Positions 3,325 to 62,209 of a stretch of 64,000 nucleotides of DNA are shown piece after piece. The DNA lies in assembly GCF_036365525.1 (NCBI RefSeq), contig NW_027140807.1:1116001-1180000 (forward strand), given 5' to 3'. The stretch is from Heterodontus francisci. Taxonomy: Eukaryota. Below the pieces are notes generated by a model. It did not search any database and was not told the origin of the DNA. It saw nothing but the letters and a program-made list of their open reading frames with translations. Within the stretch, counting starts at the first letter, position 1. Every line of letters starts with the position of its first letter. The position numbers and the translations under genes were made by a program.

Positions 3325-3954
3325 CCACAGACTCTGCACTCACTGACCCGTGTGTAAATCACACAGTCCTGGACCAGCCCTGGAGGAGCAGCGATTGTGA
3401 TGACACTCGGTGCTCCAGCCAGGTGAAGTGTGATGATGGTCTTCACTTCGGATGGTACCGATTTAAAAGGTAATGTAAAGGAACAATTTCAGGGTAATCT
3501 CGTCAATATGGGCAGAATAAGGGATTTCCCCTACCTTCTGGTACTATCTGATGGTACCAGTCTCTCTAACAGTTAATATTTACCATCAGTTCAGGGACTG
3601 ACTCTGTGATTGTTATTTCAGTTCTGGTGGATGGAAGATTCCGGAGACTGCTGTCCCACATCATCACTGCTCCACACATGTTACAAGCTGGTTACAGGGT
3701 ACTGTCAGCCTTTATAATATCAGATTTACATTCACTGTCCAGCACTGTTCACATGGGTTACATTCTTCAATATTTCTAAATTCTCATTTCAGGTTCCCAT
3801 CCCAGCGTGGGAGAGGGGGAAGTAACACGGACAGTTTGTTTACACTGGGGTACAAATCACTGCTACAAGGTCCATGAGATAAAGATCAAAAACTGCAGCA
3901 GTTACTTCGTTTATGAGTTGAAGTCGTTGTTTCGTTGTGCTGCGTATTGTACAG
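3325..3954 (+). CDS. Copy A D8C domain (UMOD/GP2/OIT3-like), three exons
   Basis: Joined: TTDSALTDPCVNHTVLDQPWRSSDCDDTRCSSQVKCDDGLHFGWYRFKSSGGWKIPETAVPHHHCSTHVTSWLQGSHPSVGEGEVTRTVCLHWGTNHCYKVHEIKIKNCSSYFVYELKSLFRCAAYCT. Has the family motifs DPC..LDxPWRS, CD..GWYRF, WLxGxHP, VTRTVC.HW, NC..YFVY, AYCT. Confidence 0.92.
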
Positions 3955-6900
3955 GTACATTGATGTTTCTATATCATTCAGAGGCTGATTCTGGGATATC
4001 CTTTGTCACTCACCGAAATGAGACAGTTTACTCGCTCCCCTCCTTATTGAAAGGGACACAGTGAATAAAGTGTCTGAAACACAAAGTGTACTTCACTGAA
4101 ACTCTAGGGAACTGAACTCTGCTGTCCCTGTCTATCAGGCACTCTGATCCCTGCAGTGTTCATGGCTCACGTCAGGTCCCCACTGCAGTGCTGGATACCT
4201 CACACTCCCTCTCCAGGAAACAATGTTCACGAGGAGTCAGATTGGATAGTCGAGGGTTTGATAAAGATGAAAATCTGACACTGTCTGGACTCGAGTACTA
4301 AATACATGAGCTCTTCGGGTTTCCTCCTCTCCGCCCTCTTCCTTTATTACAGATCCAGAGACTGCCACAACTGAGGAACCCGAGGAACAATCAACTCGAG
4401 AATCCACGAGGGGATCATCGTCTACCCCAGCGGTGTCTGGAACATCAGGTACCCCCCTTGTGGGCCCATTCGAAACAGATTCCACACCCAATGTTACATC
4501 ATAGAAGATCAGTCCTGGAGATCATCCAGTCTCTTACTGAGGGAAGTGGGATGGAGTGACTGAGGGGAGTGGAATGTAGTGACTGAGGGGAGTGGATGGG
4601 GCGACTGAGGGGAGTGGAATGGGGTGACTGAGGGGAGTGGGATGGGGTGACTGAGGGGGAGTGGGATGTAGTGATTGAGGGGAGTGGGATGTAGTGACTG
4701 AGGGGAGTGGGATGTAGAGACTGCGGGGAGTGGCATGCAGTGATTAAGGGGAGTGGGATGATGTAATTGAGGGGATTGGGATGTAGTGAAGGAGGGGAGT
4801 GGGATGAAGTAATTGAGGGGAGTGGGATGCAGTGACAGAGGGGAGTGGGATGCAGTGACGGAGGGGAGTGGGATGATGTAATTGAGGGGAGTGGGATTTA
4901 GTGACTAAGGGGATTGAGAAGATGTGATTGCGGGGAGTGGGATGCAATGACTGAGGGCAGTGACATTTTATGACTGGGGAAAATGTTATGCAGTTCCTGT
5001 GCCAACTGGGATGCGGTGAGTGTGGACAGTGGATTGTCTCACAATGGTTTTCATATAGACTAGCATCTGTGATTTACTGTACTCTAATCTATCCAGTTCG
5101 AGCTTCCTCTCACTCCTGCTCTCCCCCATGTTTCTTTCCCTTTATTACACATCCAGAGACTTCAACAACCTCAAGAACCAAGGAGCAAACAACTCCACAC
5201 TCCATTGAGAAATCACCATCTAACCCAATCGATACTTTCACCTCAGGTGTCAGTTTAGTGTTGATCAAGCAGGACGGGTAGATTCTTACACTGACTGCCT
5301 GATTTGGGTGAATGGAATCTACCGCACAGTAAGAGGCCACTCGGCCCCTCTTGCTACTCCTCTTTATCCAACCTTATCCCTCTTTTCCTTTCTCCTTCAG
5401 GTGTTTAACCAGATTTACCTCAAATTTCATTGCCCTGGACAATTCAGGATTAATTCTACATTCTCACTACACCTTGGTGTACTTGTCCATAGTTCACTGA
5501 AGGCAGCAGCACAGGTAGATCATGTGGTTTGGAAGGTATATGGGATACTTGCCTGTCTTAGCCGAGGCACAGAATATAAGAGCAGGGCGGTTATGATGGA
5601 GCTGTACAAAACACTAGTTAGGCCACAGCTGGAGTACTGAGAACAGTTCTGGGCACCACACTATAGGAAGGATGTGATTGCACTGGAGAGGGTGCAGAGG
5701 AGATTCACCAGGAGGTTGCCTGGGCTGGAGCATTTCAGCTGTTAAGAGAGGCTGGCTAGGCTATGGTTGTTTTCCTTAGAGCAGAGAAGGCTGAGGGGGG
5801 ACCTGATTGAGGTATACAAAATTATAAAGGGCATTGATCGGTTAGATTGGAAGAAACTATTTCCCTTAGCGGAGGGGTCAGTAACCAGGGGGAATAGACT
5901 TAAGATAAAAGGCAAGAGGTTTATAGGCGATTTGAGGAAACAGATTTTCACCCTGAGGGTGGTTGGAATCTGGAACACACTGTCTGAAGAGGTGGTAGAG
6001 GCAGGAACCCTCACAACATTTAATAAGTATGTAGATAAGCACTTGAAACGCCGCAGCATACATGATTACGGGCCAAGTGCTGGAAAATGGGATTAGAATA
6101 GCTACGTGCTTGATGATCGGCATGGACACGATGGGCCGAAGGACCTGTTTCCATGCTGTATAATTGTATGAGTCTAGGGCTGTGACGCACTTTTCAGTAA
6201 AGAGGCTTCCTCTGAAATCACCACTGGATTTACTTGTGACTGTTTTATTTTCTATCCCTCTCTCTCCACCCTCCTCTCCCACTGCCTCTTTCTGCACTTC
6301 CTGTCAGTATCTCTTTTGCTCTCTGTGTATCTTTCTCTTTATATCTCTATATTTGCTCTCTCTCTCTGTCTGCCATTTTCACTTAGTCTCTGTCTATCTC
6401 TATCTGACAATTTCGTTTTCCCTCTGTCTCTCTCTTTATCTCTGTAACTCACTGCTCTCCCCATTTCGCTTCTTCTCTCGCTGTCTGTATCTGTTGCTCT
6501 CACTCTCGGACTCTTTCTTGATCTCTCACATTTTCTATCGCTCTCTTTCTTCTCATTTTTCTCTCCCTCTGTTGCCCTCTTTCACTCTGTCTCCCACTCT
6601 CACTGTCTCTAACTCTCACACGTTATCTCTCACTCACAGTGACTGAGGGCAGTGGGATGCATTGACTGAGGGGAGTGGGATGCATTGACTGAGGGGAGTG
6701 GGATGTAGTGACTAAGGGGAGTGCAATGTAATGGCAGAGGATGGTGGGGTGTAATGACTGAGAAGAGTGGGATAGACTGATGGAGGTGAATGGAATGCAA
6801 TGACTGAGGGGACTGGGATGGAGTGGCTGAGCGGAGTTGTGTGAAAGGTTTGAGGGGAGTGAGTTGTAGTGAATGAGGGGAGTGGAATACTGTGACTGAT

Positions 6901-9900
6901 ATTAGATCCAGAGAGTGAGGGAGAGTGGGAGGCAGTGACGGAGGGGCTTGGGATGCCGTGACTGAGGGCAGTGCGATGGCCTGACTGAGGGAGTGGGATG
7001 TTGTGACTGAGGGAAGTGGGAGTGCGAGTTAGAGCCTGAGAGTAGTGGGATGTAGTGACAGAGGGAGGTGGGATGCAGTGACTGAGGGGAGTGGGATAGA
7101 CTAACGGAGCTGAGTGGGATGGATGTAGTGACCTATGGGAGTGGGATGCGGTGACTGAGGGGAGTGGAATGTAGAGACCGAGGGTTGTGGGTTACACAGG
7201 CTGAGGGGAGTGTAACACAGTGACTGAGGGGAGAGTGATACAGTGACTGAGGGGAGTGGGATACAGTGACTGAGGGGAGTGGGATACAGCGAAAGAGGGG
7301 AGTGGGATACAGCGACTGAGGGGAGTGGGATACAGCGACGGAGGGGCATGGGACACAGCGACTGAGGGGAGTGTGATACAGTGACTGAGTGGAGTGGGAT
7401 ACAGTAATGTCGTGATCAGGATGGAAGATGATGGATTTATAAAGATTGATATCTCACTTTCTCCTGACACTAGTACCATCCTGTTGAAATGTTGTGTTTT
7501 TCTCCATCTCTCACTCTGCAATGTTTCCCTCCCTTTATTACAGAGCCCATGACTTCCCAAACTCAGGAATCCGAGGAACAATCGACTGGAGAATCCACTG
7601 AGGTTTCATCCTCTATCCCAGTGGGCTCTGGAACCCCAGGTATCTGCCGTGCCGGATTATAATTACAGAAAGATGGAATCAGAGACTGGTTACAGCACAG
7701 AAAGAGGCCATTCAGCCCATCGTCACCGTGCCAGCTCTCTGCCAGAGCAATCCACCTACTCGCACTCCTGCCATTTCCCCATCACCCAGCAGATTGTTTC
7801 TCCTATGATAATTTTCCAATTCCCTTTTGAAAGCCTCAATTGAACCTGCCTCCAGCGCACTCACAGGCAGTGCATTCCAGACCCTAACCACTCGCTGTGT
7901 GAAAAGGTTTTCCTGTCTCTGTTGCGACTTTTACCACTCACCTAAAACCGGTGTCCTCTGGTTCTGGATTCTACCACCAATGGGAACAGTTTCTCCCTGT
8001 CAGCTCTGTCCACATCCCTCGCGATTTTGAACACCTCGATCAAATCTTCTCTTAATCTTCTCTTCTCCAGGGAGAACAGCCCCATCTTCTCCAATCTATC
8101 CAAGTAACTGACGTCCCTCATCCTGGGAACCATTCTCGTAAATCATCTCCGCACCCTCTCGAATACCTTAACGTCCTTCCTAAGTATTCACCGCTCTCTG
8201 TCTTGCCACCTTCAATGATTTGTGCACACGTACGCCCAGGTCCCTCTGCCCCTGCACCCCCTTTACAATTGTATCCTTTATTTTATATTGCCTCTCCTCG
8301 TTCGTCCGACCAAAATGAATCACTTCACAATTCTCTGCATTAAATTTCATCTGTCACTTGCCTGCCCATTCCACAGGTCTGTCTATGTCCACTTGAAGTC
8401 CATCACTATCCTTCTCACTGTTCACAATACTTCCAGGTCTTGTGCCCTCCACAACTTTTGAAATTCTGCCCTGTACACACAAATGCAACACATTAATATA
8501 CATCAAGAAAAACAGGGTTCGATCAATATTAAAGAGTAAAACACAGATGCACAGAGAATTAGGAGGGACAGATAACACTGGAGTAGAAAAGAGTAACGTA
8601 TTGGACGGGGACAGTGCAAGAGGGATGGTGATGAGCTGAAAATTCAGTTTAATGTGTGTATATGGATGCACGGAGAGTGGTAAATAAGGTTGTTGAGCTG
8701 CAGGCGCAGATAGCCACGTGGAAATATGCTGTTGTGGCAATAACCGAGTCCTGGTTCCAAGAGAGGCAGGACTGGGTAGTGAATATTCCTGACAAGGTGT
8801 TCAGGAAAGAGAGGGAAGGAAGGAAAGGAGGAGGGGCATCAGTATTGTTTAAGGGGAGAATTACAGTGCTGGAAGAAGATGATGTCGGAGAGGAACCAAG
8901 GATAGAATCCATCAGATTAAAGTGAAACAACGAAAGAAATACCATGACCTTTCTGGGTGTATTTTATAGGCCAACAACTAGTGGGAAAGATATAGATGAA
9001 CAGATTTGCATAGAGCAACCAAGAGATGCAAGAGTTAAAGTGTAGATATATCATTGGGCTATAATTATCTGAATATACTCTGGAATAGTAATAGTGTAAA
9101 CGGCAGAGAGGCACAAGAGTTTCTCGAGTGTGTTCAGGAGAATTTCCTACGTCAGTTTGTTTCAAGTCCAACGAGGAAGGAGGCATTGCTGGATCTGGTT
9201 CTGGGAAATGAGGTTGGACAAGTGAATTAAGGGTCAGCCGGGGAACATTTGGGGACAGTGACCAGCGTATCATGTGGTTTAGGTTGGTAATGGAAAAGGA
9301 CAAGGAGAAATGCGGAGGAAAGATAATTCAGTGAGGGAGAACCAATCTCAATAGAGTGAGAACAGATCTGACCCAAATAATCTGGAATCATATTACAGAT
9401 TCCCACACTGTGACGCCTGAAGTGCTCATTCCAAGAGACGCATCCAGTCTCTTAATGATGGAGTGTGGGGCAATGATAGAGGGCAGTTGGAAAACAGTGA
9501 CAGAGGGGAGTGGGATGAAGTGACTGAAGGGAGTGTGATACAGTGACTGAGGGGATGGGACACAGTTACTGAGGGGAGTGTGATACAGCGACTGAGGAGA
9601 GTGTGATACAGCGACTGAGGGGAGAGTGAATCAGTGACTGAGGGGAGTGTGAAACAGTGACTGAGGGGAGTGTGATACATTGACTGAGGGGAGAGCGATA
9701 CAGTGACTGAGGGGAGTGGGATCGGGCGACTGAGATGAGTGTGATACACTGACTGAGATGAGTGTGATGCAGTGACTGAGGGGAGTGTGATAGAGACAGA
9801 GGGGAGTGTGACGCCGTGACTGAGGGGAGTTTGACACAATAATGTAGTGAACAGATGGAAGACTATGGTTTTATAAAGATTGATATCTGACATTCTCCTG

Positions 9901-12900
9901 ACACTAGTACCATCCTGTTGACCTATTGTGTTATCCTCCATGTCTCACTCTGCAATGTCTCCCTCCCTTTATTACAGAACCCGTGACTTACCAAACTCAG
10001 GAATCTGAGGAACAATCGACTGCAGAATCCACTGAGGGGCCCTCCTCTATCCCAGCGGGCTCTGGAAGCTCAGGTATCTGCCTTGTGGGGTTATCATCGC
10101 AGAATCATGGAATCATAAACCGGTTACAGCACAGAAAGAGGCCGTTCAGACAATCGTCACCGTGCCAGCTCTCTGCCTGAGCAACTCAACTGCTCCCACT
10201 CCTGCAATTTCCCCATCTCCCTGCAGATTGTTTCTCCTGTGATAATTATCCAATTCCCTTTTGAAAGCCTCAATTGAACCTGCCTCCAGCACAGTCTCAG
10301 GCAGTGCATTCCAGATCCTAACCACTCGCTGTGTGAAAAGGTTTTCCTGTCTCTGTTGCTACTTTTACCACTCACTTAAAGCCGGTGCCCTCTGGTTCTG
10401 GATCCTCCCACCAATGGGAGCAATTTCTCCCTGTCTACTCTGTCCACATCCCTCGTGATTTTGAACATCTCGATTAAATCTCTTCTTAATCTTCTCTTCT
10501 CCAGGGACAAGAGCCCCAGCTTCTCCAATGTATCCATGTAACTGACGTCCCTCATCCCAGGAACCATTCTCGTAAATCATTTCCGCACCCTCTCGAATAC
10601 CTTCACATCCTTCCGAACGTATTAACCGCTCTCTGGACCTGTCTTGCCACCTTCAATGATTTGTGCACACGTACGCCCAGGTCCCTCTGCCCCTGCACCC
10701 CCTTTGCAATTGTATCCTTTATTTTATATTGCCTCTCCTCGTTCGTCCGACCAAAATGAATCACTTCACAATTCTCTGCGTTAAGTTTCATCTGCCACTG
10801 TCTGCCAATCCCACCAGCCTGTCTATAACCTCCTGACGTCTATCACTATCCTCCTCACAGTTTACAATACTTCCAGGTTTTGTGTCATCTGCAAATTTTG
10901 AAATTGTGGCATGTACGCCCCAGTCTATGTCATTAATATACACCAGGGAAAACAGGGGTCCGAGCAATATTACAGATCAAAACACAGATGCACAGAGAAT
11001 TAGGAGGGACAGATAACACTGGAGTAGAAAAGAGTAACGTATTAGACAGGGACAGTGTAAGAGGGAAGGTGATGAGCTGTAAATTCAGTTCAATGTGTGT
11101 ATTTATGAGAATGCAATGAGAGTGGTAAAAAAGGTTGTTGAGCTGCAGGCGCAGATAGCCATGTGGAAATATGATGTTGTGTCAATAACAGAGTCCTGGC
11201 TCTAAGAGGGGCAGGACCTGGTAGTGAATATTCCTGACTACAATGTGCTCAGGAAAGGGAGGGATGGAAGGAAAGGAGGAGGGGTATCAGTATTGATAAA
11301 GAGGAACATTACAGTGCTGGAAAGAGATGATGTCGGAGAGGAACCAAGGATAGAATCCATCAGATTAGAATGAAACAAGGAAAGAAATACCATTACCTTT
11401 CTGGGTGTATTCTATAGGCCAACAAGTAGTGGGAAAGATATAGAGGAACAGATTTGCATGGAGCAACCAAGAAGTGCAAGAGTTAAAGTGTAGATATATC
11501 GTTGGGCTTTAGTTATCTGAATATAGACTGGGATAGTAATAGTGTAAAGGGCAGAGAGGGACAAGAATTTCTAGAGTGTGTCCAGAAGGATTCCCTCCGT
11601 CAGTTTGTTTCCAGTCCAACGAGGAAGGAGGCATTGCTGGATCTGGTTCTGGGAAATGTGGTTGGATAAGTGAATTATGGGTCAGTCGGGGAACATTTAG
11701 GGGACAGTGACCATCATATCATGTGGTTTAGGTTGGCAATGGAAAAGGACAATGAGAAATCCGGAGGAAAGATAATTCATTGAGGGAGAACCAATCTCAG
11801 TAGAGTGAGAACAGATCTGACCCAAATAAACTGGAATCATATTATAGACACACATAGTGTGATACCTGACGTGCTCAGTCTCAGTGACCCATCCAGTCTC
11901 TTACTGATGGAGTGTGGGGAAATGACAGGGCAGTGGGATATAATGACCGAGGGGAGTGGGATGTACTGTCTGAGGGGTGAGGGATGTAATGACTGAGGGG
12001 AGAGGGATATAGTGACTGTGGGCAGTGGGATATAGTGAGTGAGGGGAGAGGGATGCAGTGACTGAGGGGAATGGGACATCGTGACTGAGGGGAGTTGGAT
12101 ATAGTGACTGTGGGCAGTGGGACATAGTGATTGAGGGTACTGTGATAAAGTGACTGAGGGGAGTATGATACAGTCACTGAGGGGAGTGGGATGCTGCGAC
12201 TGAGGGCTGTTTTATAGTGTGACTGTGGGGAGTGGGATACAGTGACTGAGAGGAGTGTGATACAGTGACTGAGAGAGTGTGATGCAGTGACTGAGGGGCG
12301 TGTGATGCAGTGACTGAGGGGAGTGTAATACAGCGACTGAGGAGAGTCTGATACAGCGACTGAGGGGAGTGAGATACAGCGACTGGCGTGTGTGTGATAC
12401 AGTGACTGAGGTGAGTGTGATACAGTGAGTGAGGGGAGTGTGATATAGGGACTGAGGTGATTGTGATTGAGTGACTGAGGGGAATGTGATACAGTGACTG
12501 AGGGGAGTGTGATATAGTGACTGGGGTGAGTGTGATGCAGTGACTGAGGGGAGCGTGACGCCGTGACTGAGGGGAGTGTGACACAGTAATGTATTGAACA
12601 GGATGGAAGATTATGGTTTTATAAAGATTGTTATCTGTCATTCTCCTCACACGAGCACCATCCTGTTGACCTGATGTGTGTTTCTCCATGTCTCACTTGG
12701 CAATGTCTCCCTCCCATTATGACAGAACCCGTGACTTCCCAAACTTAGGAATCCGAGGAACAATCGACTAGAGAATCTACTGAGGTTTCATCCTCCACCC
12801 CAGCGGGCTCTGGAAGCTCAGGTACCTGCCTTGTGCGGTTATCATCGCAGAATCATGGAATCAGAGACTGGTTACAGCACAGAAAGAGCCCGTTGAGCCC

Positions 12901-26775: not shown

Positions 26776-26809
26776 AATCTTAATGACTGCCCAATTCAAT
26801 ATCGGGGTA

Positions 26810-41498: not shown

Positions 41499-41780
41499 TG
41501 TATCCTTGTGAGCCCCACAGTAGTAAGCGCTGTTGGCTTGGACCCGGGAGCTTTTCAATGACAGAGTGAAAATGTTTGCCTGAGTCTCGTGCTGGGTTTC
41601 AATCCTTTTCCTGTCGTTCAATGAAGAAAGTACACTCTATCTGATCCATTCCATGCAGTCACCAATCTGCAAGTACCAGTCCAAATAACACTCAGTCATG
41701 TTGCCCTCCCCAATGCTTCTGTGGAACGTGGCTTCCTCCACGGGAACCAGGGTTTTGACCACCGGGGACTGGAGAACCAT
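41499..41780 (-). pseudogene. Degenerate antigen-receptor V segment (probably TCR; family uncertain)
   Basis: MVLQSPVVKTLVPVEEATFHRSIGEGNMTECYLDWYLQIGDCMEWIR*SVLSSLNDRKRIETQHETQANIFTLSLKSSRVQANSAYYCGAHKD. First Cys lost, TAG at 41639-41637, WYxQ and AYYC kept. A hydrophobic leader-like stretch (ICLLLIPSLLLLPLS, no ATG) lies at about 41840-41895. Confidence 0.8.
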
Positions 41781-48555: not shown

Positions 48556-48589
48556 ATGTGGACTCTGCTGATCATTCTGGGTTACCTGA
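48556..48589 (+). CDS. Copy B signal-peptide exon
   Basis: aagATGtgg; MWTLLIILGYL + a|gtgagt; joins in phase 1 to ITDSTLTDPC. Confidence 0.85.
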
Positions 48590-51500: not shown

Positions 51501-54500
51501 CACGAGCTCTTCGGGTTTTCTCCACTCTGCCCTCTTCCTTTATTACAGATCCAGAGACTGCCGCAGCTGAGGAACCCGAGGAACAAACAACTCGAGAATC
51601 CACCAGGGGATCATCGTCTACCCCAGCGGTGTCTGGAACATCAGGTATCCCCCTTGTGGGGTCCATTCGAAACAGATTCCACACCCAATGTTACATCATA
51701 GAAGATCAGTCCTGGAGATCATCCAGTCTCTTACTGAGGGAGTGAGATGGAGTGACTGCGGGAAGTGGGATGGAGTGACTGAGGGGAGTGGGATGGGGTG
51801 ACTGAGGGAAGTGGGATGGAGTGACTGAGGTGAGTGGGATGGGGTGACTGAGGGGAGTGGGATGTGTTGACTGAGGGGACTGGGATGCAGTGACTAAGGA
51901 GAGTGGGATGATGCAATTGAGGGGAGTGGAATACAGAGACTGAGGGGAGTGGGATGTCGTGACTGAGGGGAGTGGGATGCACTGACTGAGAGAAGTGGGA
52001 TGCACTGACTGAGAGGAGTGGGATGCACTGACTGAGGAGAGTGGGATGCAGTGACTGAGGGGAATGGGATGCAGTAATTGAGGGGAGTGGGATGTAGTGA
52101 CGGAGGAGAGTGGGATGTAGAGGCTGAGAGGATTGGGATGCAGTGACTGGGGAGTGGAATGCACTGATTGAGGGGTGTGGGATGCAGTGACTGAGGGGAG
52201 TGGGCTGCAGTGACTGAGCGGAGTGGCATGCACTGATTGAGGGGAGTGGGATGCACTGATTGAGGGGAGTGGGATGCAGTGACTGAGAGGAGTGGGATGC
52301 AGTGGCTGAGGGGAGTGGGATGGGGTGACTGAGGGGAGTGGGATGTGGTGATTGAGGGCAGTGGGTTGCAGTGACTGAGGGGAGTGGGATGCAGTGACTG
52401 AGGGGAGTGGGATGATGTAATTGAGCGGAGTGGGATGCAGTAATTCAGGGGAGCGCGATGTAGAGACTGAGGGGAGTGGAATGCACTGACTGAGGGGTGT
52501 GGGATGCAGTGACGGAGGGGAGTGGGATGATGTAATTGAGGGGAGTGGTATTTAGTGACTAAGGGGATTGAGAAGATGTGATTGCGGGGAGTGGGATGCA
52601 ATGACTGAGGGCAGTGACATTTTATGACTGGGGAAAATGTAATGCAGTTCCTGTGCCAACTGGGATGCGGTGAGTGTGGACAGTGGATTGTCTCACAATG
52701 GTTTTTATATACACTAGCATCTGTGATTTACTGTACTCTAATCTATCCAGTTCGAGCTTTCTCTCACTCCTTCTCTCCCCCATGTTTCTCTTCCTTTATT
52801 ACACATCCAGAGACTTCAACAACTGCAAGAACCAAGGAGCAAACAACTCCACACTCCATTGAGAAATCACCATCTAACCCAATCGATATTTTCACCTCAG
52901 GTGTCAGTATTGTGTTGATCAATCAGGACGGGTTGACTCTTGCACTGACTGCCTGATTTGGGTGAATGGAATCTACCGCACAGGAAGAGGCCACTCGGCC
53001 CCTCTTGCTACTCCTCTTCATCCAACCTTATCCTTCTTTTCCTTTCTCCCTCAGGTGTTTAACCAGATATACCTTAGATTTCATTGCCCTGGACAATTCA
53101 GGATTAATTCTACATTCTCACTACACCTTGATGTACTTGTCCATAGTTCACTGAAGGCAGCAGCACAGGTAGATCATGTGGTTTGGAAGGCATATGGGAT
53201 ACTTGCCTGTCTTAGCCGAGGCACAGAATATAAGAGCAGGGCGGTTATGATGGAGCTGTACAAAACGCTAGTTTGGCCACAGCTGGAGTACTGAGAACAG
53301 TTCTGGGCACCACACTAAAGGAAGGATGTGATTGCACTGGAGAGGGTGCAGAGGAGATTCACCAGGAGGTTGCCTGGGCTGGAGCATTTCAGCTGTGAAG
53401 AGAGGCTGGATAGGCTATGGTTGTTTTCCTTAGAGCAGAGAAGGCTGAGGGGGGACCTGATTGAGGTATACAAAATTATGCGGGGCATTGATTTGTTAGA
53501 TTGGAAGAAACTATTTCCCTTAGCGGAGGGGTCAGTAACCAGGGGGAATAGACTTAAGATAAAAGGCAAGAGGTTTATAGGGGATTTGAGGAAACAGATT
53601 TTCACCCTGAGGGTGGTTGGAATCTGGAACACACTGTCTGAAGAGGAGGTAGAGGCAGGAACCCTCACAACATTTAATAAGTATTTAGATAAGCACTTGA
53701 AACGCCGCAGCATACATGATTACGGGCCAAGTGCTGGAAAATGGGATTAGAATAGCTCCATGCTTGATGATCGGCATGGACACGATGGGCCGAAGGGCCT
53801 GTTTCCATGCTGGATAATTGTATGAGTCTAGGGCTGTGACGCACTTTTGAGTAAAGAGGCTTCCTCTGAAATCACCACTGGATTTACTTGTGACTGTTTT
53901 ATTTTCTATCCCTCTCCCTCCACCCTCCTCTCCCACTGCCTCTTTCTGCACTTACTGTCAGTATCTCTTTTGCTCTCCGTGTATCTTTCTCTTTATATCT
54001 CTATATTTGCTCTCTCTCTCTCTGCCATTTTCACTCAGTCTCTGTCGATCTCTATCTGACAATTTTGTTTTCCCTCTGTCTCTCTCTTTATCTCTGTAAC
54101 TCACTGCTCTCCCCCTTTCGCTTCTTCTCTCGCTGTCTGTATCTGTTGCTCTCACTCTCGGACTCTTTCTTGATCTCTCACATTTTCTATCGTTCTCTTT
54201 CTTCTCATTTTTCTCTCCCTCTGTTGCCCTCTTTCACTCTGTCTCCCACTCTCACTGTCTCTAACTCTCACACATTATCTCTCACTCACAGTGACTGAGG
54301 GCAGTGGGATGCATTGACTGAGGGGAGTGGGATGCATTGACTGAGGGGAGTGGGATGTAGTGACTAAGGGGAGTGCAATGTAATGGCAGAGGATGGTGGG
54401 GTGTAGTGACTGAGAAGAGTGGGATAGACTGATGGAGGTGAATGGAATGCAATGACTGAGGGGACTGGGATGGAGTGGCTGAGCGGAGTTGTGTGAAAGG

Positions 54501-57500
54501 TTTGAGGGGAGTGGGTTGCAGTGAATGAGGGGAGTGGAATACTGTGGAATGAGGGGAGTGGAATACTGTGACTGATATTAGATCCAGAGAGTGAGGGAGA
54601 GTGGGAGGCAGTGACGGAGGGGCTTGGGATTCCGTGACTGAGGGCAGTGCGATGGCCTGACTGAGGGAGTGGGATGTTGTGACTGAGGGAAGTGGGAGTG
54701 CGAGTTAGAGCCTGAGAGTAGTGGGATGTAGTGACAGAGGGAGGTGGGATGCAGTGACTGAGGGGAGTGGGATAGACTAACGGAGCTGAGTGGGATGTAG
54801 TGACCTATGGGAGTGGGATGCGGTGACTGAGGGGAGTGGAATGTAGAGACCGAGGGTTGTGGGTTACACAGGCTGAGGGGAGTGTAATACAGTGACTGAG
54901 GGGAGTGTGATACAGTGACTGAGGGGAGTGGGATACAGTGACTGAGGGGAGTGGGATACAGCGACTGAGGGGAGTAGGATACAGCGACTGAGGGGGAGTG
55001 GGATACATCGAGTAAGGGGCATGGGACACAGCGACTGAGGGGAGTGGGATACAGTGACTGAGGGGAGTGGGATACAGTAATGTAGTGATCAGGATGGAAG
55101 ATGATGGATTTATAAAGATTGATATCTCACTTTCTCCTGACACTAGTACCATCCTGTTGAAATGTTGTGTTTTTCTCCATCTCTCACTCTGCAATGTTTC
55201 CCTCCCTTTCTAACAGAGCCCATGACTTCCCAAACTCAGGAATCTGAGGAACAATCGACTGGGGAATCCACTGAGGTTTCATCCTCTATCCCAGTGGGCT
55301 CTGGAACCCCAGGTATCTGCCGTGCCGGATTATAATTACAGAATGATGGAATCAGAGACTGGTTACAGCACAGAAAGAGGCCATTCAGCCCATCGTCACC
55401 GTGCCAGCTCTCTGCCAGTGCAATCCACCTACTCCCACTTCTGCCATTTCCCCATCACCCTGCAGATTGTTTCTCCTATGATAATTTTCCAATTCCCTTT
55501 TGAAAGCCTCAATTGAACCTGCCTCCAGTGCACTCTCAGGCAGTGCATTCCAGACCCTAACCACTCGCTGTGTGAAAAGATTTTCCTGTCTCTGTTGCTA
55601 CTTTTACCAATCACCTAAAACCGGTGTCCTCTGGTTCTGGATTCTCCCACCAATGGGAACAGTTTCTCCCTGTCTGCTCTGTCCACATCCCTCGTGATTT
55701 TGAAAACCTCGATCAAATCTTCTCTTAATCTTCTCTTCTCCAGGGAGAACAGCCCCATCTTCTCCAATCTATCCAAGTAACTGACGTCCCTCATCCTGGG
55801 AAACATTCTTGTAAATCATCTCCGCACCCTCTCGAATACCTTAACATCCTTTCTAAGTATTAACCGCTCTCTCGACCTGTCTTGCCACCTTCAATGATCT
55901 GTGCACATGTGCCCCCAGGTCCCTCTGCCCCTGCACCCCTTTACAATTGTATCCTTTATTTTATATTGCCTCTCCTCCTTCTTCCGACCAAAATGCATCA
56001 CTTCACAATTCTCTGCATTAAATTTCATCTGCCACTTGCCTGCCCATTCCACAGGTCTGCTTAAGTCCACTTGAAGTCCATCACTATCCTTCTCACTGTT
56101 CACAACACTTCCAGGTCTTGTGCCCTCCACAAATAAGGTTGTTGAGCTGCAGGCGCAGATAGCCACGTGGAAATATGCTGTTGTGGCAATAACCGAGTCC
56201 TGGTTCTAAGAGAGGCAGGACTGGGTAGTGAATATTCCTGACTACAAGGTGTTCAGGAAAGAGAGGGGAGGAAGGAAAGGAGGAGGGGCATCAGTATTGT
56301 TTAAGGGGAGAATTACAGTGCTGGAAGGAGTTGATGTCGCAGAGGAACCAAGGATAGAATCCATCAGATTAAAGTGAAACAACGAAAGAAATACCATGAC
56401 CTTTCTGGGTGTATGTTCTAGGCCAACAACTAGTGGGAAAGATATAGATGAACAGATTTGCATAGAGCAACCAAGAGATGCAAGAGTTAAAGTGTAGATA
56501 TATCATTGGGCAATAATTATCTGAATATAGTCTGGAATAGTAATAGTGTAAAGGGCACAGAGGGACAAGAGTTTCTCGAATATGTTAAGGAGAATTTCCT
56601 ACGTCAGTTTGTTTCCAGTCCAACGAGGAAGGAGGCATTGTTGGATCTGATTCTGGGAAATGAGGTTGGACAAGTGAATTAAGGGTCAGCCGGGGAACAT
56701 TTGGGGACAGTGACCAGCGTATCATATGGTTTAGGTTGGCAATGGAAAGTGACAAGGAGAAATCCAGAGGAAAGATAATTCATTGAGGGAGAACCAATCT
56801 CAATGGAGTGAGAACAGATCTGACCCAAATAAACTGGAATCATATTACAGAGTCCCACACTGTGATGCCTGAAGTGCTCATTCCAAGAGACGCATCCAGT
56901 CTCTTAATGATGGAGTGTGGGGCAATGATAGAGGGCAGTTGGAAAACAGTGACTGAGGGGAGAGGGATCTCGTGACTGAGGGGGGCGGGGTGGGATGCAG
57001 TGACCGAGGGGATTGGGATGCAGTGACTGAGGGCAGCGGGACATAGTGACTGAGGGCAGTGGGACATAGTGACTGAGGGCAGTGAGATTTAGTGACTGAA
57101 GGGAGTGTGATGTATTGACTGTGCGCATTGGGATACAGTGACTGAGGAGATTGGGATACAGTGTCTGAGGAGATTGGGATACAGTGTCTGAGGGGAGTGT
57201 GATGCAGCAACTGAGGGGAGTGTGATACAGTCAATGAGGGGAGAGCGATACAGTGACTGAGGGAACGGTGATACAGTTACTGAGGGAAGTGTGATACACT
57301 GACTGAGGGAAGAGCGATACAGTGAGAAAGGGGAGTGTGATACAGGGACTGAGGGAGTGTGACATAGTGACTGAGGGGAGAATGATACAGCGACTGAGGG
57401 GAGAGTGATACAGCGACTATGGCAGTGTGATACAGTGACTGAGGGGAGTGTGATACAGGGACTGAGGGGAGTGGAATACAGTGACTGAAGGGAGTGTGAT

Positions 57501-60500
57501 ACAGTGACTGAGGGGATGGGACACAGTGACTGAGGGGAGTGTGATGCAGCGACTGAGGAGAGTGTGATACAGCGACTGAGGGGCGTGTGATTCAGTGACT
57601 GAGGGGAGTGTGGAACAGTGACTGAGAGGAGTGTGATACATTGACTGAGGGGAGTGCGATACAGTGACTGAGGGGAGTGGGATCGGGCGACTGAGATGAC
57701 TGTGATACAGTGACTGAGATGAGTGTGATGCAGTGACTGAGGGGAGTGTGATAGAGACAGAGGGGAGTGTGACGCCGTGACTGAGGGGAGTTTGACACAA
57801 TAATGTAGGGAACAGATGGAAGACTATGGTTTTATAAAGATTGATATCTGACATTCTCCTGACACTAGTACCATCCTGTTGACCTATTGTGTTATCCTCC
57901 ATGTCTCACTCTGCAATGTCTCCCTCCCTTTATTACAGAACCCGTGACTTACCAAACTCAGGAATCCGAGGAACAATCGACTGCAGAATCCACTGAGGGG
58001 CCCTCCTCTATCCCAGCGGGCTCTGGAAGCTCAGGTATCTGCCTTGTGGGGTTATCATCGCAGAATCATGGAATCATAAACCGGTTACAGCACAGAAAGA
58101 GGCCGTTCAGACAATCGTCACCGTGCCAGCTCTCTGCCTGAGCAACTCAACTACTCCCACTCCTGCCATTTGGCCATCTCCCTGCAGATTGTTTCTCCTG
58201 TGATAATTATCCAATTCCCTTTTGAAAGCCTCAATTGAACCTGCCTCCAGCACAGTCTCAGGCAGTGCATTCCAGACCCTAACCACTCGCTGTGTGAAAA
58301 GATTTCCCTGTCTCTGTTGCTACTTTTACCACTCACTTAAAGCCGGTGCCCTCTGGTTCTGGATCCTCCCACCAATGGGAACAATTTCTCCCTGTCTACT
58401 CTGTCCACATCCCTCGTGATTTTGAACATCTCGATTAAATCTCTTCTTAATCTTCTCTTCTCCAGGGACAAGAGCCCCAGCTTCTCCAATGTATCCATGT
58501 AACTGACGTCCCTCATCCCAGGAACCATTCTCGTAAATCATTTCCGCACCCTCTCGAATACCTTCACATCCTTCCGAACGTATTAACCGCTCTCTGGACC
58601 TGTCTTGCCACCTTCAATGATTTGTGCACACGTACGCCCAGGTCCCTCTGCCCCTGCACCCCCTTTGCAATTGTATCCTTTATTTTATATTGCCTCTCCT
58701 CGTTCGTCCGACCAAAATGAATCACTTCACAATTCTCTGCGTTAAGTTTCATCTGCCACTGTCTGCCAATCCCACCAGCCTGTCTATAACCTCCTGACGT
58801 CTATCACTATCCTCCTCACAGTTTACAATACTTCCAGGTTTTGTGTCATCTGCAAATTTTGAAATTGTGGCATGTACGCCCCAGTCTATGTCATTAATAT
58901 ACATCAGGGAAAACAGGGGTCCGAGCAATATTACAGATCAAAACACAGATGCACAGAGAATTAGGAGGAACAGATAACACTGGAGTAGAAAAGAGTAACG
59001 TATTAGACAGGGACAGTGTAAGAGGGAAGGTGATGAGCTGTAAATTCAGTTCAATGTGTGTGTATATGAGAATGCAATGAGAGTGGTAAAAAAGGTTGTT
59101 GAGCTGCAGGCGCAGATAGCCATGTGGAAATATGATGTTGTGGCAATAACAGAGTCCTGGCTCTAAGAGGGGCAGGACCTGGTAGTGAATATTCCTGACT
59201 ACAAGGTGCTCAGGAAAGGGAGGGATGGAAGGAAAGGAGGAGGGATATCAGTATTGATAAAGAGGAACATTACAGTGCTGGAAAGAGATGATGTCGGAGA
59301 GGAACCAAGGATAGAATCCATCAGATTAGAATGAAACAAGGAAAGAAATACCATTACCTTTCTGGGTGTATTCTATAGGCCAACAAGTAGTGGGAAAGAT
59401 ATAGAGGAACAGATTTGCATGGAGCAACCAAGAAGTGCAAGAGTTAAAGTGTAGATATATCGTTGGGCTTTAGTTATCTGAATATAGACTGGGATAGTAA
59501 TAGTGTAAAGGGCAGAGAGGGACAAGAATTTCTAGAGTGTGTCCAGAAGTATTCCCTCCGTCAGTTTGTTTCCAGTCCAACGAGGAAGGAGGCATTACTG
59601 GATCTGGTTCTGGGAAATGTGGTTGGATAAGTGAATTATGGGTCAGTCGGGGAACATTTAGGGGACAGTGACCATCATATCATGTGGTTTAGGTTGGCAA
59701 TGGAAAAGGATAATGAGAAATCCGGAGGAAAGATAATTCATTGAGGGAGAACCAATCTCAGTAGAGTGAGAACAGATCTGACCCAAATAAACTGGAATCA
59801 TATTATAGACACACATAGTGTGATACCTGACGTGCTCAGTCTCAGTGACCCATCCAGTCTCTTACTGATGGAGTGTGGGGAAATGACAGAGGGCAGTGGG
59901 ATATAATGACCGAGGGGAGTGGGATGTACTGTCTCAGGGGTGAAGGATGTAATACTGAGGGGAGAGGGATATAGTGACTGTGGGCAGTGGGATATAGTGA
60001 GTGAGGGGAGAGGGATGCAGTGACTGAGGGGAATGGGACATCGTGACTGAGGGGAGTTGGATATAGTGACTGTGGGCAGTGGGACATAGTGATTGAGGGT
60101 ACTGTGATAAAGTGACTGAGGGGAGTATGATACAGTCACTGAGGGGAGTGGGATGCTGCGACTGAGGGCTGTTTGATAGTGTGACTATGGGGAGTGGGAT
60201 ACAGTGACTGAGAGGAGTGTGATACAGTGACTGAGAGAGTGTGATGCAGTGACTGAGGGGCGTGTGATGCAGTGACTGAGGGGAGTGTAATACAGCGACT
60301 GAGGAGAGTCTGATACAGCGACTGAGGGGAGTGAGATACAGCGACTGGCGTGTGTGTGATACAGTGACTGAGGTGAGTGTGATACAGTGAGTGAGGGGAG
60401 TGTGATATAGGGACTGAGGTGATTGTGATAGAGTGACTGAGGGGAATGTGATACAGTGACTGAGGGGAGTGTGATATAGTGACTGAGGTGAGTGTGATGC

Positions 60501-62209
60501 AGTGACTGAGGGGAGCGTGACGCCGTGACTGAGGGGAGTGTGACACAGTAATGTATTGAACAGGATGGAAGATTATGGATTTGTAAAGATTGTTATCTGT
60601 CATTCTCCTGACACGAGCACCATCCTGTTGACCTGATGTGTGTTTCTCCATGTCTCACTTGGCAATGTCTCCCTCCCTTTATGACAGAACCCGTGACTTC
60701 CCAAACTCAGGAATCCGAGGAACAATCGACTAGAGAATCTACTGAGGTTTCATCCTCCACCCCAGCGGGCTCTGGAAGCTCAGGTACCTGCCTTGTGGGG
60801 TTATCATCGCAGAATCATGGAATCAGAGACTGGTTACAGCACAGAAAGAGCCCGTAGAGCCCATCGTCACTGTGACAGCTCGATGCCTGTGCAACTAACC
60901 TACTCCCACTCCTGCTATTTCCCCGTCGCACTGCAGATTGTTTCGCCAATGACAATTTTCCAATTCCCTTTTGAAAGCCTCAATTGAACCTACCTCCAGC
61001 ACACTCTCAGGCAGTGCATTTCAGATCCTAACCACACGCTGTGTGAAAAGGTTTTACTGTCTCTGTTGTAATTTTTACCACTCACCTAAAACCGGTGCCC
61101 TCTAGTTCTGGATCCTCCCACCAATGGGACTTAGGGCTGTGGGATATAGTGAGTGAGGGGAGAGGGATGTAGTGACTGAGGGGAGTGGGACATAGTGACT
61201 TAGGGTAGTGGGATATAGTGAGTGAGGGGAGAAGGATGTAGTGACTGAGGGGAGTGGGACATAGTGACTGAGGGGAGTGGGATGTAGTTACTGAGGGCAG
61301 TAGGACATAGTGATTGAGGGCAGTGGGAAATAGTCATCGAGGTGTGCGGAACATAGTGACTGAGGGCAGTGGAATATAATGAATGAGGACAGTGGGACAT
61401 ATTGTCTGAGGGCAGAGGGATATAGTCATTGTGGGGAGTGGGATATAGTCATTGGGGGCAGTGGGACATAGTCACTGAGGGCAGTGGGACATAGTGACTG
61501 AGGTCAGTGGGATATAGTCATTGAGGGGAGTGGGATATAGTCATTGAGGGCAGTGGGACATAGTCACTGAGGTGAGTGTGATATAGTGACTGATGGGATA
61601 GGTATGCAGTGATTGAGGGCAGTGGGATATAGTGACTGAGGGCAGTGGTATGTATTCACTGCACGGAGTGGGATGTGGTAGCTGCGGAGAGTGGGATGCA
61701 GTGACTGAGGTGAGTGGGATACAGTGACTGAGGGGAGTGGGATACAGCGACTGAGGGTAGTATGATACAGTGACTGAGGGGAGTGTGACACAGTGTCTGA
61801 GGGGAGTATGATACAGTCACTGAGGGGAGTGTGATGCAGCGACTGAGGGTAGTGTGATCCAGTGACAGAGGGAGTGTGAAACAGTGACAGAGGGGAGTGT
61901 GATGCAGTGACTGAGGGGAGTGTGATGGAGACTGAGGGGAGCGTGACGCCGTGACTGAGGGGAGTGTGACATAGTAATGTAGTGAACAGGATGGAAGATA
62001 ATGGTTTTATAAAGATTGTTATCTGTCATTCTCCTCACACGAGCACCATCCTGTTGACCTGATGTGTTTTTCTCCATGTCTCACTTTGCAATGTCTCCCT
62101 CCATTTATAACAGAACCCGTGACTTCCAAAACTCAGGAATCCGAGGAACAATCGACCAGAGAATCTACTGAGGTTTCATCCTCCACCCCAGCGGGCTCCG
62201 GAAGCTCAG
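48556..62209 (+). CDS. Copy B: spliced D8C-mucin gene, 3' end beyond the window
   Basis: Leader 48556-48589; D8C 50516-50660, 50813-50889, 50984-51145; stalk 51549-51644, 52811-52900, 55217-55312, 57939-58034, 60688-60783, 62114-62209. All open and phase-compatible. Confidence 0.85.
48660..50120. mobile_element. L2-type LINE fragments in opposite orientations (about 48660-49535 on -, 49540-50120 on +) within an intron of copy B
   Basis: ILLELSAVFDTIHH on -; TSRLDYS/LADL and LTDLHWLP on +. Confidence 0.75.

What the first reader, a model, noticed from the sequence alone, without database searches (positions are those of the whole stretch)
3325..62209. Tandem family of secreted, ZP-less D8C 'decoy module'-mucin genes interleaved with TCR V segments
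Seen: two paralogues 47.2 kb apart with signal peptide, D8C, S/T/E/P stalk and a ~60-aa tail, no ZP module and no TM/GPI segment in the reconstructed chain; RSS-bearing TCR V pseudogenes lie between them on the opposite strand. Established: in uromodulin and GP2 the D8C/D10C module is attached to a polymerising ZP module and acts as a glycan decoy for the bacterial adhesin FimH; tetrapod TRB loci contain interspersed trypsinogen genes. Inference: a stand-alone, duplicated decoy or pattern-binding protein on a variable-length mucin stalk, expanded together with or within an elasmobranch TCR V cluster. I do not recognise this architecture as a named gene.
Basis: partly seen in the sequence, partly recalled or inferred. 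Interest (0 to 1): 0.88.

Follow-up and report, generated by a model that had tools for sequence, protein, structure and literature searches.

The report
Shark ZP-less D10C stalk genes
Two tandem copies of a real, spliced shark gene encode a secreted protein with a uromodulin/GP2-type D10C head, an acidic Ser/Thr stalk and a small conserved tail but no filament-forming ZP module; the family occurs across sharks and rays, has no name or study, and here lies among T-cell-receptor V pseudogenes.

Summary
The observation largely holds. A block of at least 13 kb (3293 to about 15.7 kb) recurs at 50484-64000, offset 47.2-48.0 kb, at 84-99% identity. Each copy has three exons for a true D10C/D8C domain, followed by 96-nt phase-1 Ser/Thr/Glu exons, each embedded in a unit of exon, transposon fragment and 23-nt satellite. 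Only copy B has its signal-peptide exon in the window (48556-48589). Only copy A has its tail exons and stop codon there (21625-23456). All exon borders are AG/GT.

Spliced RNA contigs show the signal-peptide-to-D10C and D10C-to-stalk joints, though mostly from 90-95% identical paralogues. RefSeq-predicted relatives in five shark and five ray genera share this architecture. Pfam finds only D8C in them: no EGF and no ZP. Their C-terminal ends are not hydrophobic, so no anchor is evident.

Two V pseudogenes with 23-RSS, one TRBV-like, lie between the copies on the minus strand.

Function is inferred, not shown. The head lacks the β-hairpin of the GP2/UMOD decoy module and the UMOD N275 sequon, but keeps the GP2 N65-type sequon.

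The scan's first readers noted similar genes in V arrays on other pieces of this genome. I rate it a new variant of a known kind, of moderate-to-high interest.

The parts
3325..3469 (+). Gene A, D10C exon 1 (TDSALTDPCVNHT...; carries the GP2 N65-type sequon)
   Evidence: AG/GT borders. 47/47 identical to module 2 of the H. francisci paralogue P0175.
3622..3698 (+). Gene A, D10C exon 2
   Evidence: AG/GT borders. 25/25 identical to P0175 module 2.
3793..3954 (+). Gene A, D10C exon 3
   Evidence: Pfam D8C_UMOD 31.4 bits, profile positions 34-87 of 88. GP2 7p6r E 1.3e-6.
4353..4448 (+). Gene A, stalk exon S1 (96 nt, phase 1-1)
5157..5246 (+). Gene A, stalk exon S2 (90 nt)
   Evidence: 100% identical to P0017 residues 198-227. 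AG/GT borders.
7544..7639 (+). Gene A, cassette stalk exon A3
9978..10073 (+). Gene A, cassette stalk exon A4
12726..12821 (+). Cassette exon A5 with an in-frame TAG (its B counterpart is intact); presumably skipped or dead
15248..15379 (+). Gene A, last cassette exon A6. Usual donor after 15343. A second phase-1 donor (CATG|GTATCA) after 15379 is the one used in the RefSeq paralogue P0009.
   Evidence: 97.7% identical to P0009 residues 349-392. Borders.
19905..20000 (+). Broken cassette exon A7 (no acceptor, two stops)
21625..21684 (+). Gene A, tail exon T1
   Evidence: 21/21 identical to P0009 residues 393-413. AG/GT borders.
22572..22657 (+). Gene A, tail exon T2 (TKYKRINVKITSMTDLDDETAKRIVVER)
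   Evidence: Identical in paralogues P0174 and P0175.
23361..23456 (+). Gene A, tail exon T3 with stop codon TGA; hydrophilic end, no anchor signal
   Evidence: Identical to the C-terminus of P0174.
39928..40420 (-). TRBV-like V pseudogene. TGA in the leader and TAG at the conserved Trp. 23-RSS: CACAGTG, 23 nt, ACAAAAACA.
   Evidence: Best PDB matches are TCR beta chains, E 1e-7 to 3e-11. Pfam V-set 24.6 bits.
41499..41780 (-). Second V pseudogene. Stops, no Cys23, FR3 weakly VH-like. 23-RSS: CACAGTG, 23 nt, GCAAAAACT.
48556..48589 (+). Gene B, signal-peptide exon (MWTLLIILGYL + A|GTGAGT)
   Evidence: Unique best match in the window. RNA contig joint 48589>50516, GT..AG. Identical to the N-terminus of P0174.
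50516..50660 (+). Gene B, D10C exon 1
50813..50889 (+). Gene B, D10C exon 2
   Evidence: RNA joint 50660>50813 in three runs. Borders.
50984..51145 (+). Gene B, D10C exon 3
   Evidence: Pfam D8C_UMOD 26.0 bits for the exon alone. RNA joint 51145>51549.
51549..51644 (+). Gene B, stalk exon S1
52811..52900 (+). Gene B, stalk exon S2
55217..55312 (+). Gene B, cassette exon B3
57939..58034 (+). Gene B, cassette exon B4
60688..60783 (+). Gene B, cassette exon B5 (intact)
62114..62245 (+). Gene B, cassette exon B6 (usual donor after 62209, second donor after 62245). The tail exons lie beyond the window.

Best explanation
The window, most likely from horn shark (Heterodontus francisci) or a very close relative, holds two tandem copies of a protein-coding gene. 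The gene belongs to a family found across sharks and rays.

Architecture (shown): a short signal peptide, then one or more D10C (D8C) domains of the uromodulin/GP2 fold. Next comes an acidic Ser/Thr-rich disordered stalk built from a variable number of 96-nt phase-1 exons. Each stalk exon sits in a duplicated unit of exon, transposon fragment and 23-nt satellite. The protein ends in a conserved C-terminal unit of about 55 aa (strand-like segment, helix, strand-like segment, two conserved Cys) and a stop codon. There is no EGF domain, no ZP module, no transmembrane segment and no GPI signal.

Copy B is a single-D10C gene whose 3' end lies outside the window. Copy A is complete at its 3' end. 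It is probably the second-module-onwards part of a two-D10C gene whose 5' end lies upstream of the window.

Mechanism (inferred): the protein is secreted as a soluble, heavily O-glycosylated and/or phosphorylated glycoprotein. The stalk holds out the D10C head. The head acts in mucosal or secretory defence by presenting an N-glycan (GP2 N65-type sequon DPCVNHT) or by binding a ligand. Without a ZP module it cannot polymerise as uromodulin and GP2 do.

The family grows by unequal recombination at three levels: stalk cassettes, D10C modules and whole units of about 48 kb. The neighbouring V pseudogenes probably ride along in those units.
For: - Domain: Pfam D8C_UMOD on single exons and PDB GP2/UMOD matches.
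- Fold: an AlphaFold2 model of the closest complete paralogue, P0009, has two D10C domains at pLDDT about 90. One superposes on GP2 7p6r with Z 19.4, rmsd 1.7 Å over 123 residues.
- Gene structure: all 24 exon borders are AG/GT and the phases are consistent through to TGA.
- Signal-peptide exon: unique in the window. Its N-terminus is helical in the model.
- Splicing: RNA contigs carry GT..AG joints 48589>50516, 50660>50813 and 51145>51549. They also carry exon 3>exon 1 'goes back' joints, as expected from multi-D10C paralogues.
- Family: 617 library hits in all. Complete RefSeq models with the same order of parts exist in 10 elasmobranch genera. Pfam finds only D8C in 10 of them.
- Tail: the tail profile hits only elasmobranch proteins among the 162 then fetched.
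- Anchor: no member has a hydrophobic C-terminus.
- Paralogues: H. francisci proteins P0174 and P0175 are identical to B's signal peptide, to A's exons 1-2 and to A's tail.
- Stalk: the model is disordered over residues 269-412.
- Cassette growth.
Against: - Function is untested. The β-hairpin half of the decoy module is absent, the UMOD N275 sequon is lost, and the N65-type sequon is present in only 30 of 86 family modules.
- No RNA contig matched copy B exactly over exon 1. All contigs differ at 50619, so expression of these two particular copies is not shown. The tissue is unknown.
- Copy A has a TAG-bearing cassette exon and a broken one, and no signal-peptide exon in the window.
- Stalk exons diverge as fast as their flanks (10.4% against 11.4-11.5%), so sequence-level constraint on the stalk is weak.
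- Several RefSeq paralogue models contain transposon-derived exons or intron read-through, so they are imperfect support.
Confidence: 0.65

Rival explanations
1. These two copies are decaying pseudogene copies within a degenerate part of the array. The family is functional elsewhere, but A and B make no protein.
For: - Both V segments of the unit are pseudogenes.
- A5 carries a TAG and A7 is broken.
- A has no signal-peptide exon in the window.
- Every RNA contig over B exon 1 differs from B at 50619. Most laid contigs are only 90-95% alike.
- D10C dN/dS between A and B is 0.61.
Against: - All D10C, S1, S2, A3, A4, A6 and tail exons of A are open with intact AG/GT sites, as are all ten exons of B.
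- A5 can be skipped in frame, because cassettes are symmetrical phase 1-1.
- 18 contigs of run X1 are at least 99% alike to the stretch.
- The RNA may come from another individual.
Confidence: 0.2
2. The stalk is not a mucin-like O-glycan carrier. It is an acidic secretory phosphoprotein region (Ser-x-Glu sites for the Golgi kinase FAM20C). The protein would then serve a structural or mineral/ion-binding role rather than host defence.
For: - Each cassette exon has two S-x-E motifs.
- Net charge is acidic and Pro is only 6-10%, which is low for a classical PTS mucin domain.
Against: - Ser+Thr is 39-48%, with runs such as SSSTP that suit O-glycosylation.
- The head is homologous to the antibacterial GP2/UMOD/omcin heads (PMC11415648).
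- There is no direct evidence either way.
Confidence: 0.12
3. An ordinary uromodulin/GP2-like gene whose EGF and ZP exons were simply missed.
For: D10C is otherwise known mainly together with ZP modules: UMOD, GP2, OIT3 and the teleost omcins (PMC8930769, PMC11415648).
Against: - Gene A runs in frame into three tail exons and a TGA.
- Complete RefSeq relatives in 10 genera end the same way and have no ZP or EGF Pfam hit.
- tblastn of paralogues finds no further coding matches in the window.
Confidence: 0.02
4. The two copies are uncollapsed haplotypes or an assembly artefact, not a tandem duplication.
For: The downstream parts are 97-99% identical.
Against: - Both copies lie on one sequence with different flanks: satellite upstream of A, transposons and a signal-peptide exon upstream of B.
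- Exon 1 and intron 1 differ by 15-16%.
- Further distinct paralogues exist on at least four other H. francisci contigs.
- RNA contigs show several variants.
Confidence: 0.02

Closest known systems
[quoted passage not shown]
   Same: Homologous D10C/D8C domain: 39-45% identity, Z 19.4, rmsd 1.7 Å to GP2 7p6r for the paralogue model. The GP2 N65-type sequon sits at the same place (DPCQNYT against DPCVNHT). Both are secreted-pathway proteins.
   Different: No β-hairpin before D10C, no EGF IV, no ZP module and no GPI anchor, so no ZP-type filament. The UMOD N275 sequon is absent. Two canonical Cys positions are replaced and two new Cys lie in the first loop. Instead there is an exon-cassette acidic Ser/Thr stalk and a novel tail of about 55 aa.
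Teleost omcins (zebrafish omc1-15; PMC11415648)
   Same: Lineage-specific, tandemly amplified gene clusters encoding proteins with several D10C domains. In zebrafish omc5 is induced by E. coli and protects against infection.
   Different: Omcins keep EGF IV, the ZP module and a predicted GPI anchor, and were described as teleost-specific. The shark and ray family has none of these and has its own stalk and tail.
Secreted and membrane mucins (for example the MUC1 SEA region)
   Same: Disordered Ser/Thr-rich stalk of variable length. One RefSeq relative is auto-named 'mucin-5AC-like'.
   Different: The stalk is encoded by many separate 96-nt exons rather than one large repeat exon. Pro content is low, and there are no VWD, CK or SEA domains. 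The tail's match to the MUC1 SEA fragment is at chance level (Z 2.5).
Trypsinogen genes embedded in tetrapod TRB loci
   Same: Non-immune-receptor secretory genes interspersed among TRBV segments.
   Different: A different gene family. Here the secretory gene and the V segment appear to be parts of one repeated unit of about 48 kb. That rests on the scan's unverified notes for other windows; this window shows only one V-bearing interval.

Membership tests
UMOD/GP2/OIT3-like D8C (D10C) domain, Pfam PF23283 | Significant match to the D8C_UMOD profile | tested here: met
   Exon 3 of A alone scores 31.4 bits (cut-off 27). Exon 3 of B alone scores 26.0. Full-length paralogues score 42-255 bits.
UMOD/GP2/OIT3-like D8C (D10C) domain, Pfam PF23283 | D10C fold | tested here: met
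   Model of paralogue P0009 against GP2 7p6r: Foldseek E 4e-14, VIA Z 19.4, rmsd 1.7 Å over 123 residues. Not modelled for the window's own joined chain.
UMOD/GP2/OIT3-like D8C (D10C) domain, Pfam PF23283 | Ten conserved cysteines with C1-C8, C2-C9, C3-C6, C4-C10, C5-C7 pairing (PMC8930769) | tested here: inconclusive
   Ten Cys are present in A and B. By eye against the UMOD sequence recalled from memory, the C3 and C7 positions are Ala and Tyr, and two extra Cys lie in the WRSSDC..C loop. Connectivity was not determined.
GP2/UMOD bipartite decoy module | β-hairpin preceding D10C that forms the glycan groove | tested here: not met
   Only about 7 residues (ITDSxLT) lie between the signal peptide, or the previous module, and DPC.
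GP2/UMOD bipartite decoy module | High-mannose N-glycan site (GP2 N65 or UMOD N275) | tested here: inconclusive
   The N65-type sequon DPCVNHT is present in A and B. The N275 position reads WLQGSHP, with no sequon (PMC8930769). In the family, 30 of 86 modules keep the first and 13 of 98 the second. Glycan type is not testable here.
ZP-module polymer proteins (UMOD, GP2, OIT3, omcins) | EGF IV + ZP-N/ZP-C module and a membrane anchor or cleavage site | tested here: not met
   No ZP or EGF Pfam hit in 10 family members. Gene A ends at TGA after the tail. No hydrophobic C-terminus.
Teleost omcin cluster | Tandem cluster of multi-D10C genes | tested here: met
   Two copies in the window. At least five further H. 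francisci paralogues on four other contigs. Family members carry 1-5 D10C domains.
Classical mucins | Pro/Thr/Ser-rich tandem repeats, usually in one large exon, with VWD/CK or SEA domains | tested here: not met
   Ser+Thr is 39-48% but Pro only 6-10%. The stalk is encoded by separate 96-nt exons. No such Pfam domains.
TCR V gene segments | V-set domain with leader intron and a 23-RSS after YxC | tested here: met
   V1: V-set 24.6 bits, TCR beta chains as best PDB matches, CACAGTG-23-ACAAAAACA. V2: 23-RSS present, V-like FR3 only weakly matched. Both have stops, so both are pseudogenes.

The most novel reading that the evidence does not exclude
The D10C-stalk genes and TRBV segments are amplified together as one unit of about 48 kb. 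The D10C genes would then form a rapidly diversifying, secreted recognition or decoy family specific to sharks and rays. Its heads would be reshuffled by recombination between modules. Its expansion would be physically, and perhaps regulatorily, coupled to the TCR beta V array. This would be an innate partner family living inside an adaptive-receptor locus.
Probability: 0.2. Interest if true: 0.8.

Novelty: new variant of a known kind. Interest (0 to 1): 0.6.

Why it matters
D10C is the part of uromodulin and GP2 that captures fimbriated bacteria. Until now it has been studied mounted on a polymerising ZP module.

Sharks and rays have a large, old family that uses the same head in a different way. 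It predates the shark-ray split. The protein is soluble, sits on a stalk that lengthens by exon cassettes, and has its own conserved tail. This asks what the D10C head does by itself and offers natural material for testing it.

The locus also shows in clean form how a mucin-like region can grow by unequal recombination at intronic satellites. And it adds a second example, after trypsinogens, of secretory genes nested in TCR beta V arrays.

On the practical side, several RefSeq models of the family contain transposon exons or intron read-through and need correcting.

Tried and rejected
Synteny of relatives with TCR V segments in other species could therefore not be checked.
All searches were exon by exon by reference. 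Full-length reasoning rests on RefSeq paralogues.
- Complex prediction on two copies of the tail (P0009 residues 410-472) gave 'no answer' (score 0.01). It is evidence neither for nor against self-association.
- ESM Atlas on the tail: best score 0.79, uninformative.
- VIA-align wide search: the tail region 413-470 gave only chance-level matches at Z 2.4-2.8 (dodecins, ribosomal proteins, MUC1 SEA fragment). No fold was assigned.
- Pfam on the tail exons and on the stalk exons: nothing.
- Word-based search with the tail found only H. francisci paralogues.
- Positive selection on the D10C head is not supported. dN/dS is 0.61, and intron 1 is as diverged as exon 1 (14.5% against 15.9%).
- A short D10C-only isoform by read-through of intron 3 (another first-reader note): no RNA contig covers 51200-51535.
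- Literature searches returned nothing relevant on sharks: D8C+shark; D10C/uromodulin-like/elasmobranch; GP2-like+shark; uromodulin/elasmobranch/TCR beta; H. francisci genome+TCR.
- A first repeat finder was swamped by the 23-nt satellite. A masked self-BLAST replaced it.

Full report
**What is in the window.** The sequence is vertebrate and rich in transposon debris. About a quarter of it (about 16 kb in 13 arrays) is a G-rich 23-nt satellite, always in one orientation.

With satellites masked, a self-comparison shows one large direct duplication:

| Copy A | Copy B | Identity |
|---|---|---|
| 3293-4535 | 50484-51732 | 90.8% |
| 4963-6635 | 52617-54287 | 96.8% |
| 7406-8454 | 55079-56132 | 95.9% |
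| 9831-11922 | 57792-59883 | 99.0% |
| 12588-13174 | 60550-61136 | 98.5% |

The offset drifts from 47.2 to 48.0 kb because the satellite arrays differ in length. Inside each copy a unit of about 0.6-2 kb recurs four to five times at 86-93% identity.

**The D10C head.** Three exons in each copy have canonical AG/GT borders and phases 1/2/1/1. They encode about 127 residues:
- A: 3325-3469, 3622-3698, 3793-3954
- B: 50516-50660, 50813-50889, 50984-51145

Exon 3 of A alone passes Pfam's gathering score for D8C_UMOD (31.4 bits, profile positions 34-87 of 88). Exon 3 of B alone scores 26.0. Exon 3 of A aligns end to end with GP2 (7p6r, E 1.3e-6) and uromodulin. This is far beyond chance.

**Relatives.** An exhaustive HMMER search with exon 3 returned 617 proteins. 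The closest are RefSeq predictions from Heterodontus francisci (74-91% identity). Others come from Mustelus, Chiloscyllium, Hemiscyllium, Scyliorhinus, Carcharodon, Pristiophorus, Hypanus, Hemitrygon, Mobula, Leucoraja and Rhinoraja. They are named 'uncharacterized', 'GP2-like', 'uromodulin-like' or 'mucin-5AC-like'.

Complete models such as P0009, P0174, P0057 and P0093 share one plan. It is a short signal peptide, one to five D10C domains, a Ser/Thr/Glu-rich stretch, and a conserved C-terminal segment.

Pfam finds only D8C in ten of them, with no EGF and no ZP. None has a hydrophobic C-terminus. A profile of the C-terminal segment hits ten cluster representatives, all from sharks or rays. 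The architecture therefore predates the shark-ray split.

**Gene models in the window.** Laying the paralogues on the window with tblastn located the remaining exons.

The stalk consists of S1 (96 nt), S2 (90 nt) and cassette exons of 96 nt, all phase 1-1. Each has a polypyrimidine tract, a CAG acceptor and a GTAYCTG donor.

Copy A:
- A3, A4 and A6 are intact.
- A5 has an in-frame TAG. Its counterpart B5 is intact.
- A7 has lost its acceptor and carries stops.
- A6 and B6 have a second phase-1 donor 36 nt further on (CATG|GTATCA). This is the donor used in the RefSeq model P0009.
- Three tail exons follow: 21625-21684, 22572-22657 and 23361-23456. They are 100%, 87% and about 97% identical to P0009, and identical to P0174 over T2-T3. 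They end in TGA.
- Phase bookkeeping is consistent from exon 1 to the stop.
- Gene A therefore ends without EGF, ZP or anchor.

Copy B:
- A scan of every ATG in the window found one outstanding signal-peptide exon at 48556-48589 (MWTLLIILGYL, then A|GTGAGT). It scores 52 against 24 for the runner-up. It is identical to the N-terminus of P0174.
- B runs off the window after B6, so its tail is not visible.

Copy A has no such exon in the window. Upstream of its exon 1 lie a 2.5-kb satellite and transposon sequence.

That step is left out.

**Copy A is probably a second module.** A's exons 1 and 2 are 47/47 and 25/25 identical to the second D10C module of the H. francisci paralogue P0175. A's exon 3 is module-2-like in all three two-module paralogues examined. 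So A most likely has a first module and a signal-peptide exon upstream of the window.

B is preceded directly by the signal-peptide exon. Its exon 1 is nearer to module 1 of P0009 (41 against 35 of 47). Its exons 2-3 are nearer to module 2.

This fits the divergence profile between A and B:

| Region | Divergence A vs B |
|---|---|
| exon 1 | 15.9% |
| intron 1 | 14.5% |
| exon 2 | 6.5% |
| intron 2 | 7.4% |
| exon 3 | 10.5% |
| intron 3 | 7.5% |
| S1 to intron 5 | 2-4% |
| further downstream | about 1% |

Introns are as diverged as exons, and D10C dN/dS is 0.61. The 'hyper-divergent head' is therefore a mosaic history, not exon-specific positive selection. The cause would be recombination or conversion between modules and copies. 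The chimera reading of B is plausible but not proven, because the comparison with P0174 is ambiguous (42 against 41).

**Expression.** The only runs holding words of the stretch were three runs of one sample, flagged 'RNA? (a guess)'. Their contigs carry joints at exactly the predicted borders:
- 48589>50516, GT..AG
- 50660>50813, in all three runs
- 51145>51549, in two runs

They leave introns 51200-51535 uncovered, so the contigs are spliced RNA. 'Goes back 602' joints from exon 3 to exon 1 are what transcripts of multi-D10C paralogues would give.

Most contigs are 90-95% alike. At 50619 every contig differs from B. The splice pattern and family expression are therefore shown. Expression of A or B specifically is not, and the tissue is unknown.

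**Structure.** An AlphaFold2 model of P0009, built on a 28-sequence alignment, gives:
- two D10C domains at pLDDT about 90
- a disordered stalk over residues 269-412
- a tail (413-467) at pLDDT 63-83, with one helix (431-449) between two extended segments

The D10C domain matches the GP2 decoy-module crystal structure (Foldseek E 4e-14; VIA Z 19.4, rmsd 1.7 Å over 123 residues) and uromodulin. The tail finds only chance-level matches (Z no higher than 2.8).

**Comparison with the decoy mechanism.** In GP2 and UMOD the decoy module is a β-hairpin plus D10C. [quoted passage not shown]

In the shark genes:
- Only about seven residues precede DPC, so there is no hairpin.
- The position matching N275 (from the UMOD sequence as I recall it) reads WLQGSHP, with no sequon.
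- Both copies keep a sequon at the N65-equivalent place (DPCVNHT).
- Across 38 elasmobranch proteins, 30 of 86 modules keep the N65-type sequon and 13 of 98 the N275-type.

Glycan presentation is therefore possible but not a conserved hallmark.

The stalk exons have 39-48% Ser+Thr, 6-10% Pro, net negative charge and two S-x-E motifs per cassette. O-glycosylation is likely. Phosphorylation of the FAM20C type is an alternative or an addition.

Cassette exons diverge as fast as their flanks (10.4% against 11.4-11.5%). This suits a region constrained in composition, frame and splice sites rather than in sequence.

**The V segments.** Two V pseudogenes lie on the minus strand between the copies.
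- V1 (39928-40420) has a leader with TGA, a TAG at the conserved Trp, the motif YFCAWSQ, and a canonical 23-RSS (CACAGTG, 23 nt, ACAAAAACA). Its FR2-FR3 best matches TCR beta chains (E down to 3e-11), with Pfam V-set at 24.6 bits.
- V2 (41499-41780) has stops, lacks Cys23, ends in YYCGA plus a 23-RSS, and has a weakly VH-like FR3 (E 0.02).

Only one V-bearing interval is inside the window. Co-amplification of V and the D10C gene therefore cannot be shown here.

First-reader notes from other windows and other pieces of this genome report the same pairing and a unit of about 48-49 kb. Those notes are unverified leads.

**Comparison with known families.** The closest characterised relatives are GP2 and UMOD, and the teleost omcins. 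Omcins have five D10C domains, EGF IV, a ZP module and a GPI anchor. They form a 15-gene cluster in zebrafish and protect against bacteria (PMC11415648).

The shark and ray family shares the head and the habit of tandem expansion. It fails the ZP, EGF, anchor and β-hairpin tests. It should not be filed as a uromodulin/GP2 orthologue, an omcin or a classical mucin. It is a new architecture within the D10C superfamily. It is present in databases only as automatic predictions. Several of those contain transposon-derived exons or intron read-through (P0017, P0175, P0176).

Five literature searches found no paper on it. The library excludes most subscription journals.

**Limits.**
- The tail self-association test gave no answer.
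- The species assignment to Heterodontus francisci rests on identical or near-identical paralogue segments and is an inference.

Noticed in passing
window 665-3209, 4536-4962, 6636-7405, 9494-9830, 11927-12587, 13233-15103, 15716-19895, 51733-52616, 54289-55078, 56998-57791, 59884-60549, 61139-61969, 62622-63998: A 23-nt G-rich satellite (roughly GGGAGTGGGATGNAGTGACTGAG) fills the introns of both genes. It totals about 16 kb, a quarter of the window. It always has its G-rich strand on the coding strand, which gives a strong positive GC skew. It probably drives the unequal recombination that multiplies the stalk cassettes.
   Followed up: partly
window 50516-50812 versus 3325-3621: Exon 1 and intron 1 differ by 15-16% between the copies, but the rest differs by 1-10%. 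B's exon 1 is nearer to module 1 and its exons 2-3 nearer to module 2 of two-module paralogues. B may be a one-module chimera made by recombination between tandem D10C modules.
   Followed up: partly
window 3955-4069 and 51146-51258: Read-through of the exon 3 donor gives a conserved open tail of about 36 aa ending in TGAATAAA (stop overlapping a poly(A) signal) in both copies. No RNA contig covers 51200-51535 of this intron in the three runs laid.
   Followed up: partly
window 20307-20585, 9926-10180, 590-673: RefSeq models of H. francisci paralogues (P0175, P0176, P0017) include sequence that matches transposon or intron ORFs of this window. These are a transposon-antisense ORF, read-through of the A4 donor, and an ATG just before the satellite. 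They look like annotation artefacts.
   Followed up: partly
P0174 (H. francisci, 360 aa) versus window exons: This RefSeq model joins S1 directly to tail exon T2, skipping all cassette exons and T1. If real, stalk length is set by alternative splicing as well as by gene structure.
   Followed up: no
window 26747-27775 (+): A 342-aa ORF with a weak GIY-YIG match (21.3 bits). By my reading it is the endonuclease end of a Penelope-like retroelement. Other long ORFs at 25-45 kb look like LINE debris and have no Pfam hit.
   Followed up: partly
window 29567-31349 and 31838-33445: Two further satellites, with periods 37/370 nt and 16/33 nt, lie between gene A and the V pseudogenes.
   Followed up: no
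window 41499-41780 (-): The second V pseudogene has an FR3 more like antibody heavy-chain V than TCR beta (E 0.02 only), yet it carries a 23-RSS. It may belong to a different V lineage from the TRBV-like neighbour.
   Followed up: partly
window 40498-41294 and 43538-44336: An 0.8-kb direct repeat (84.7% identity) lies between the two V pseudogenes and is repeated 3 kb further on. Its content was not identified.
   Followed up: no
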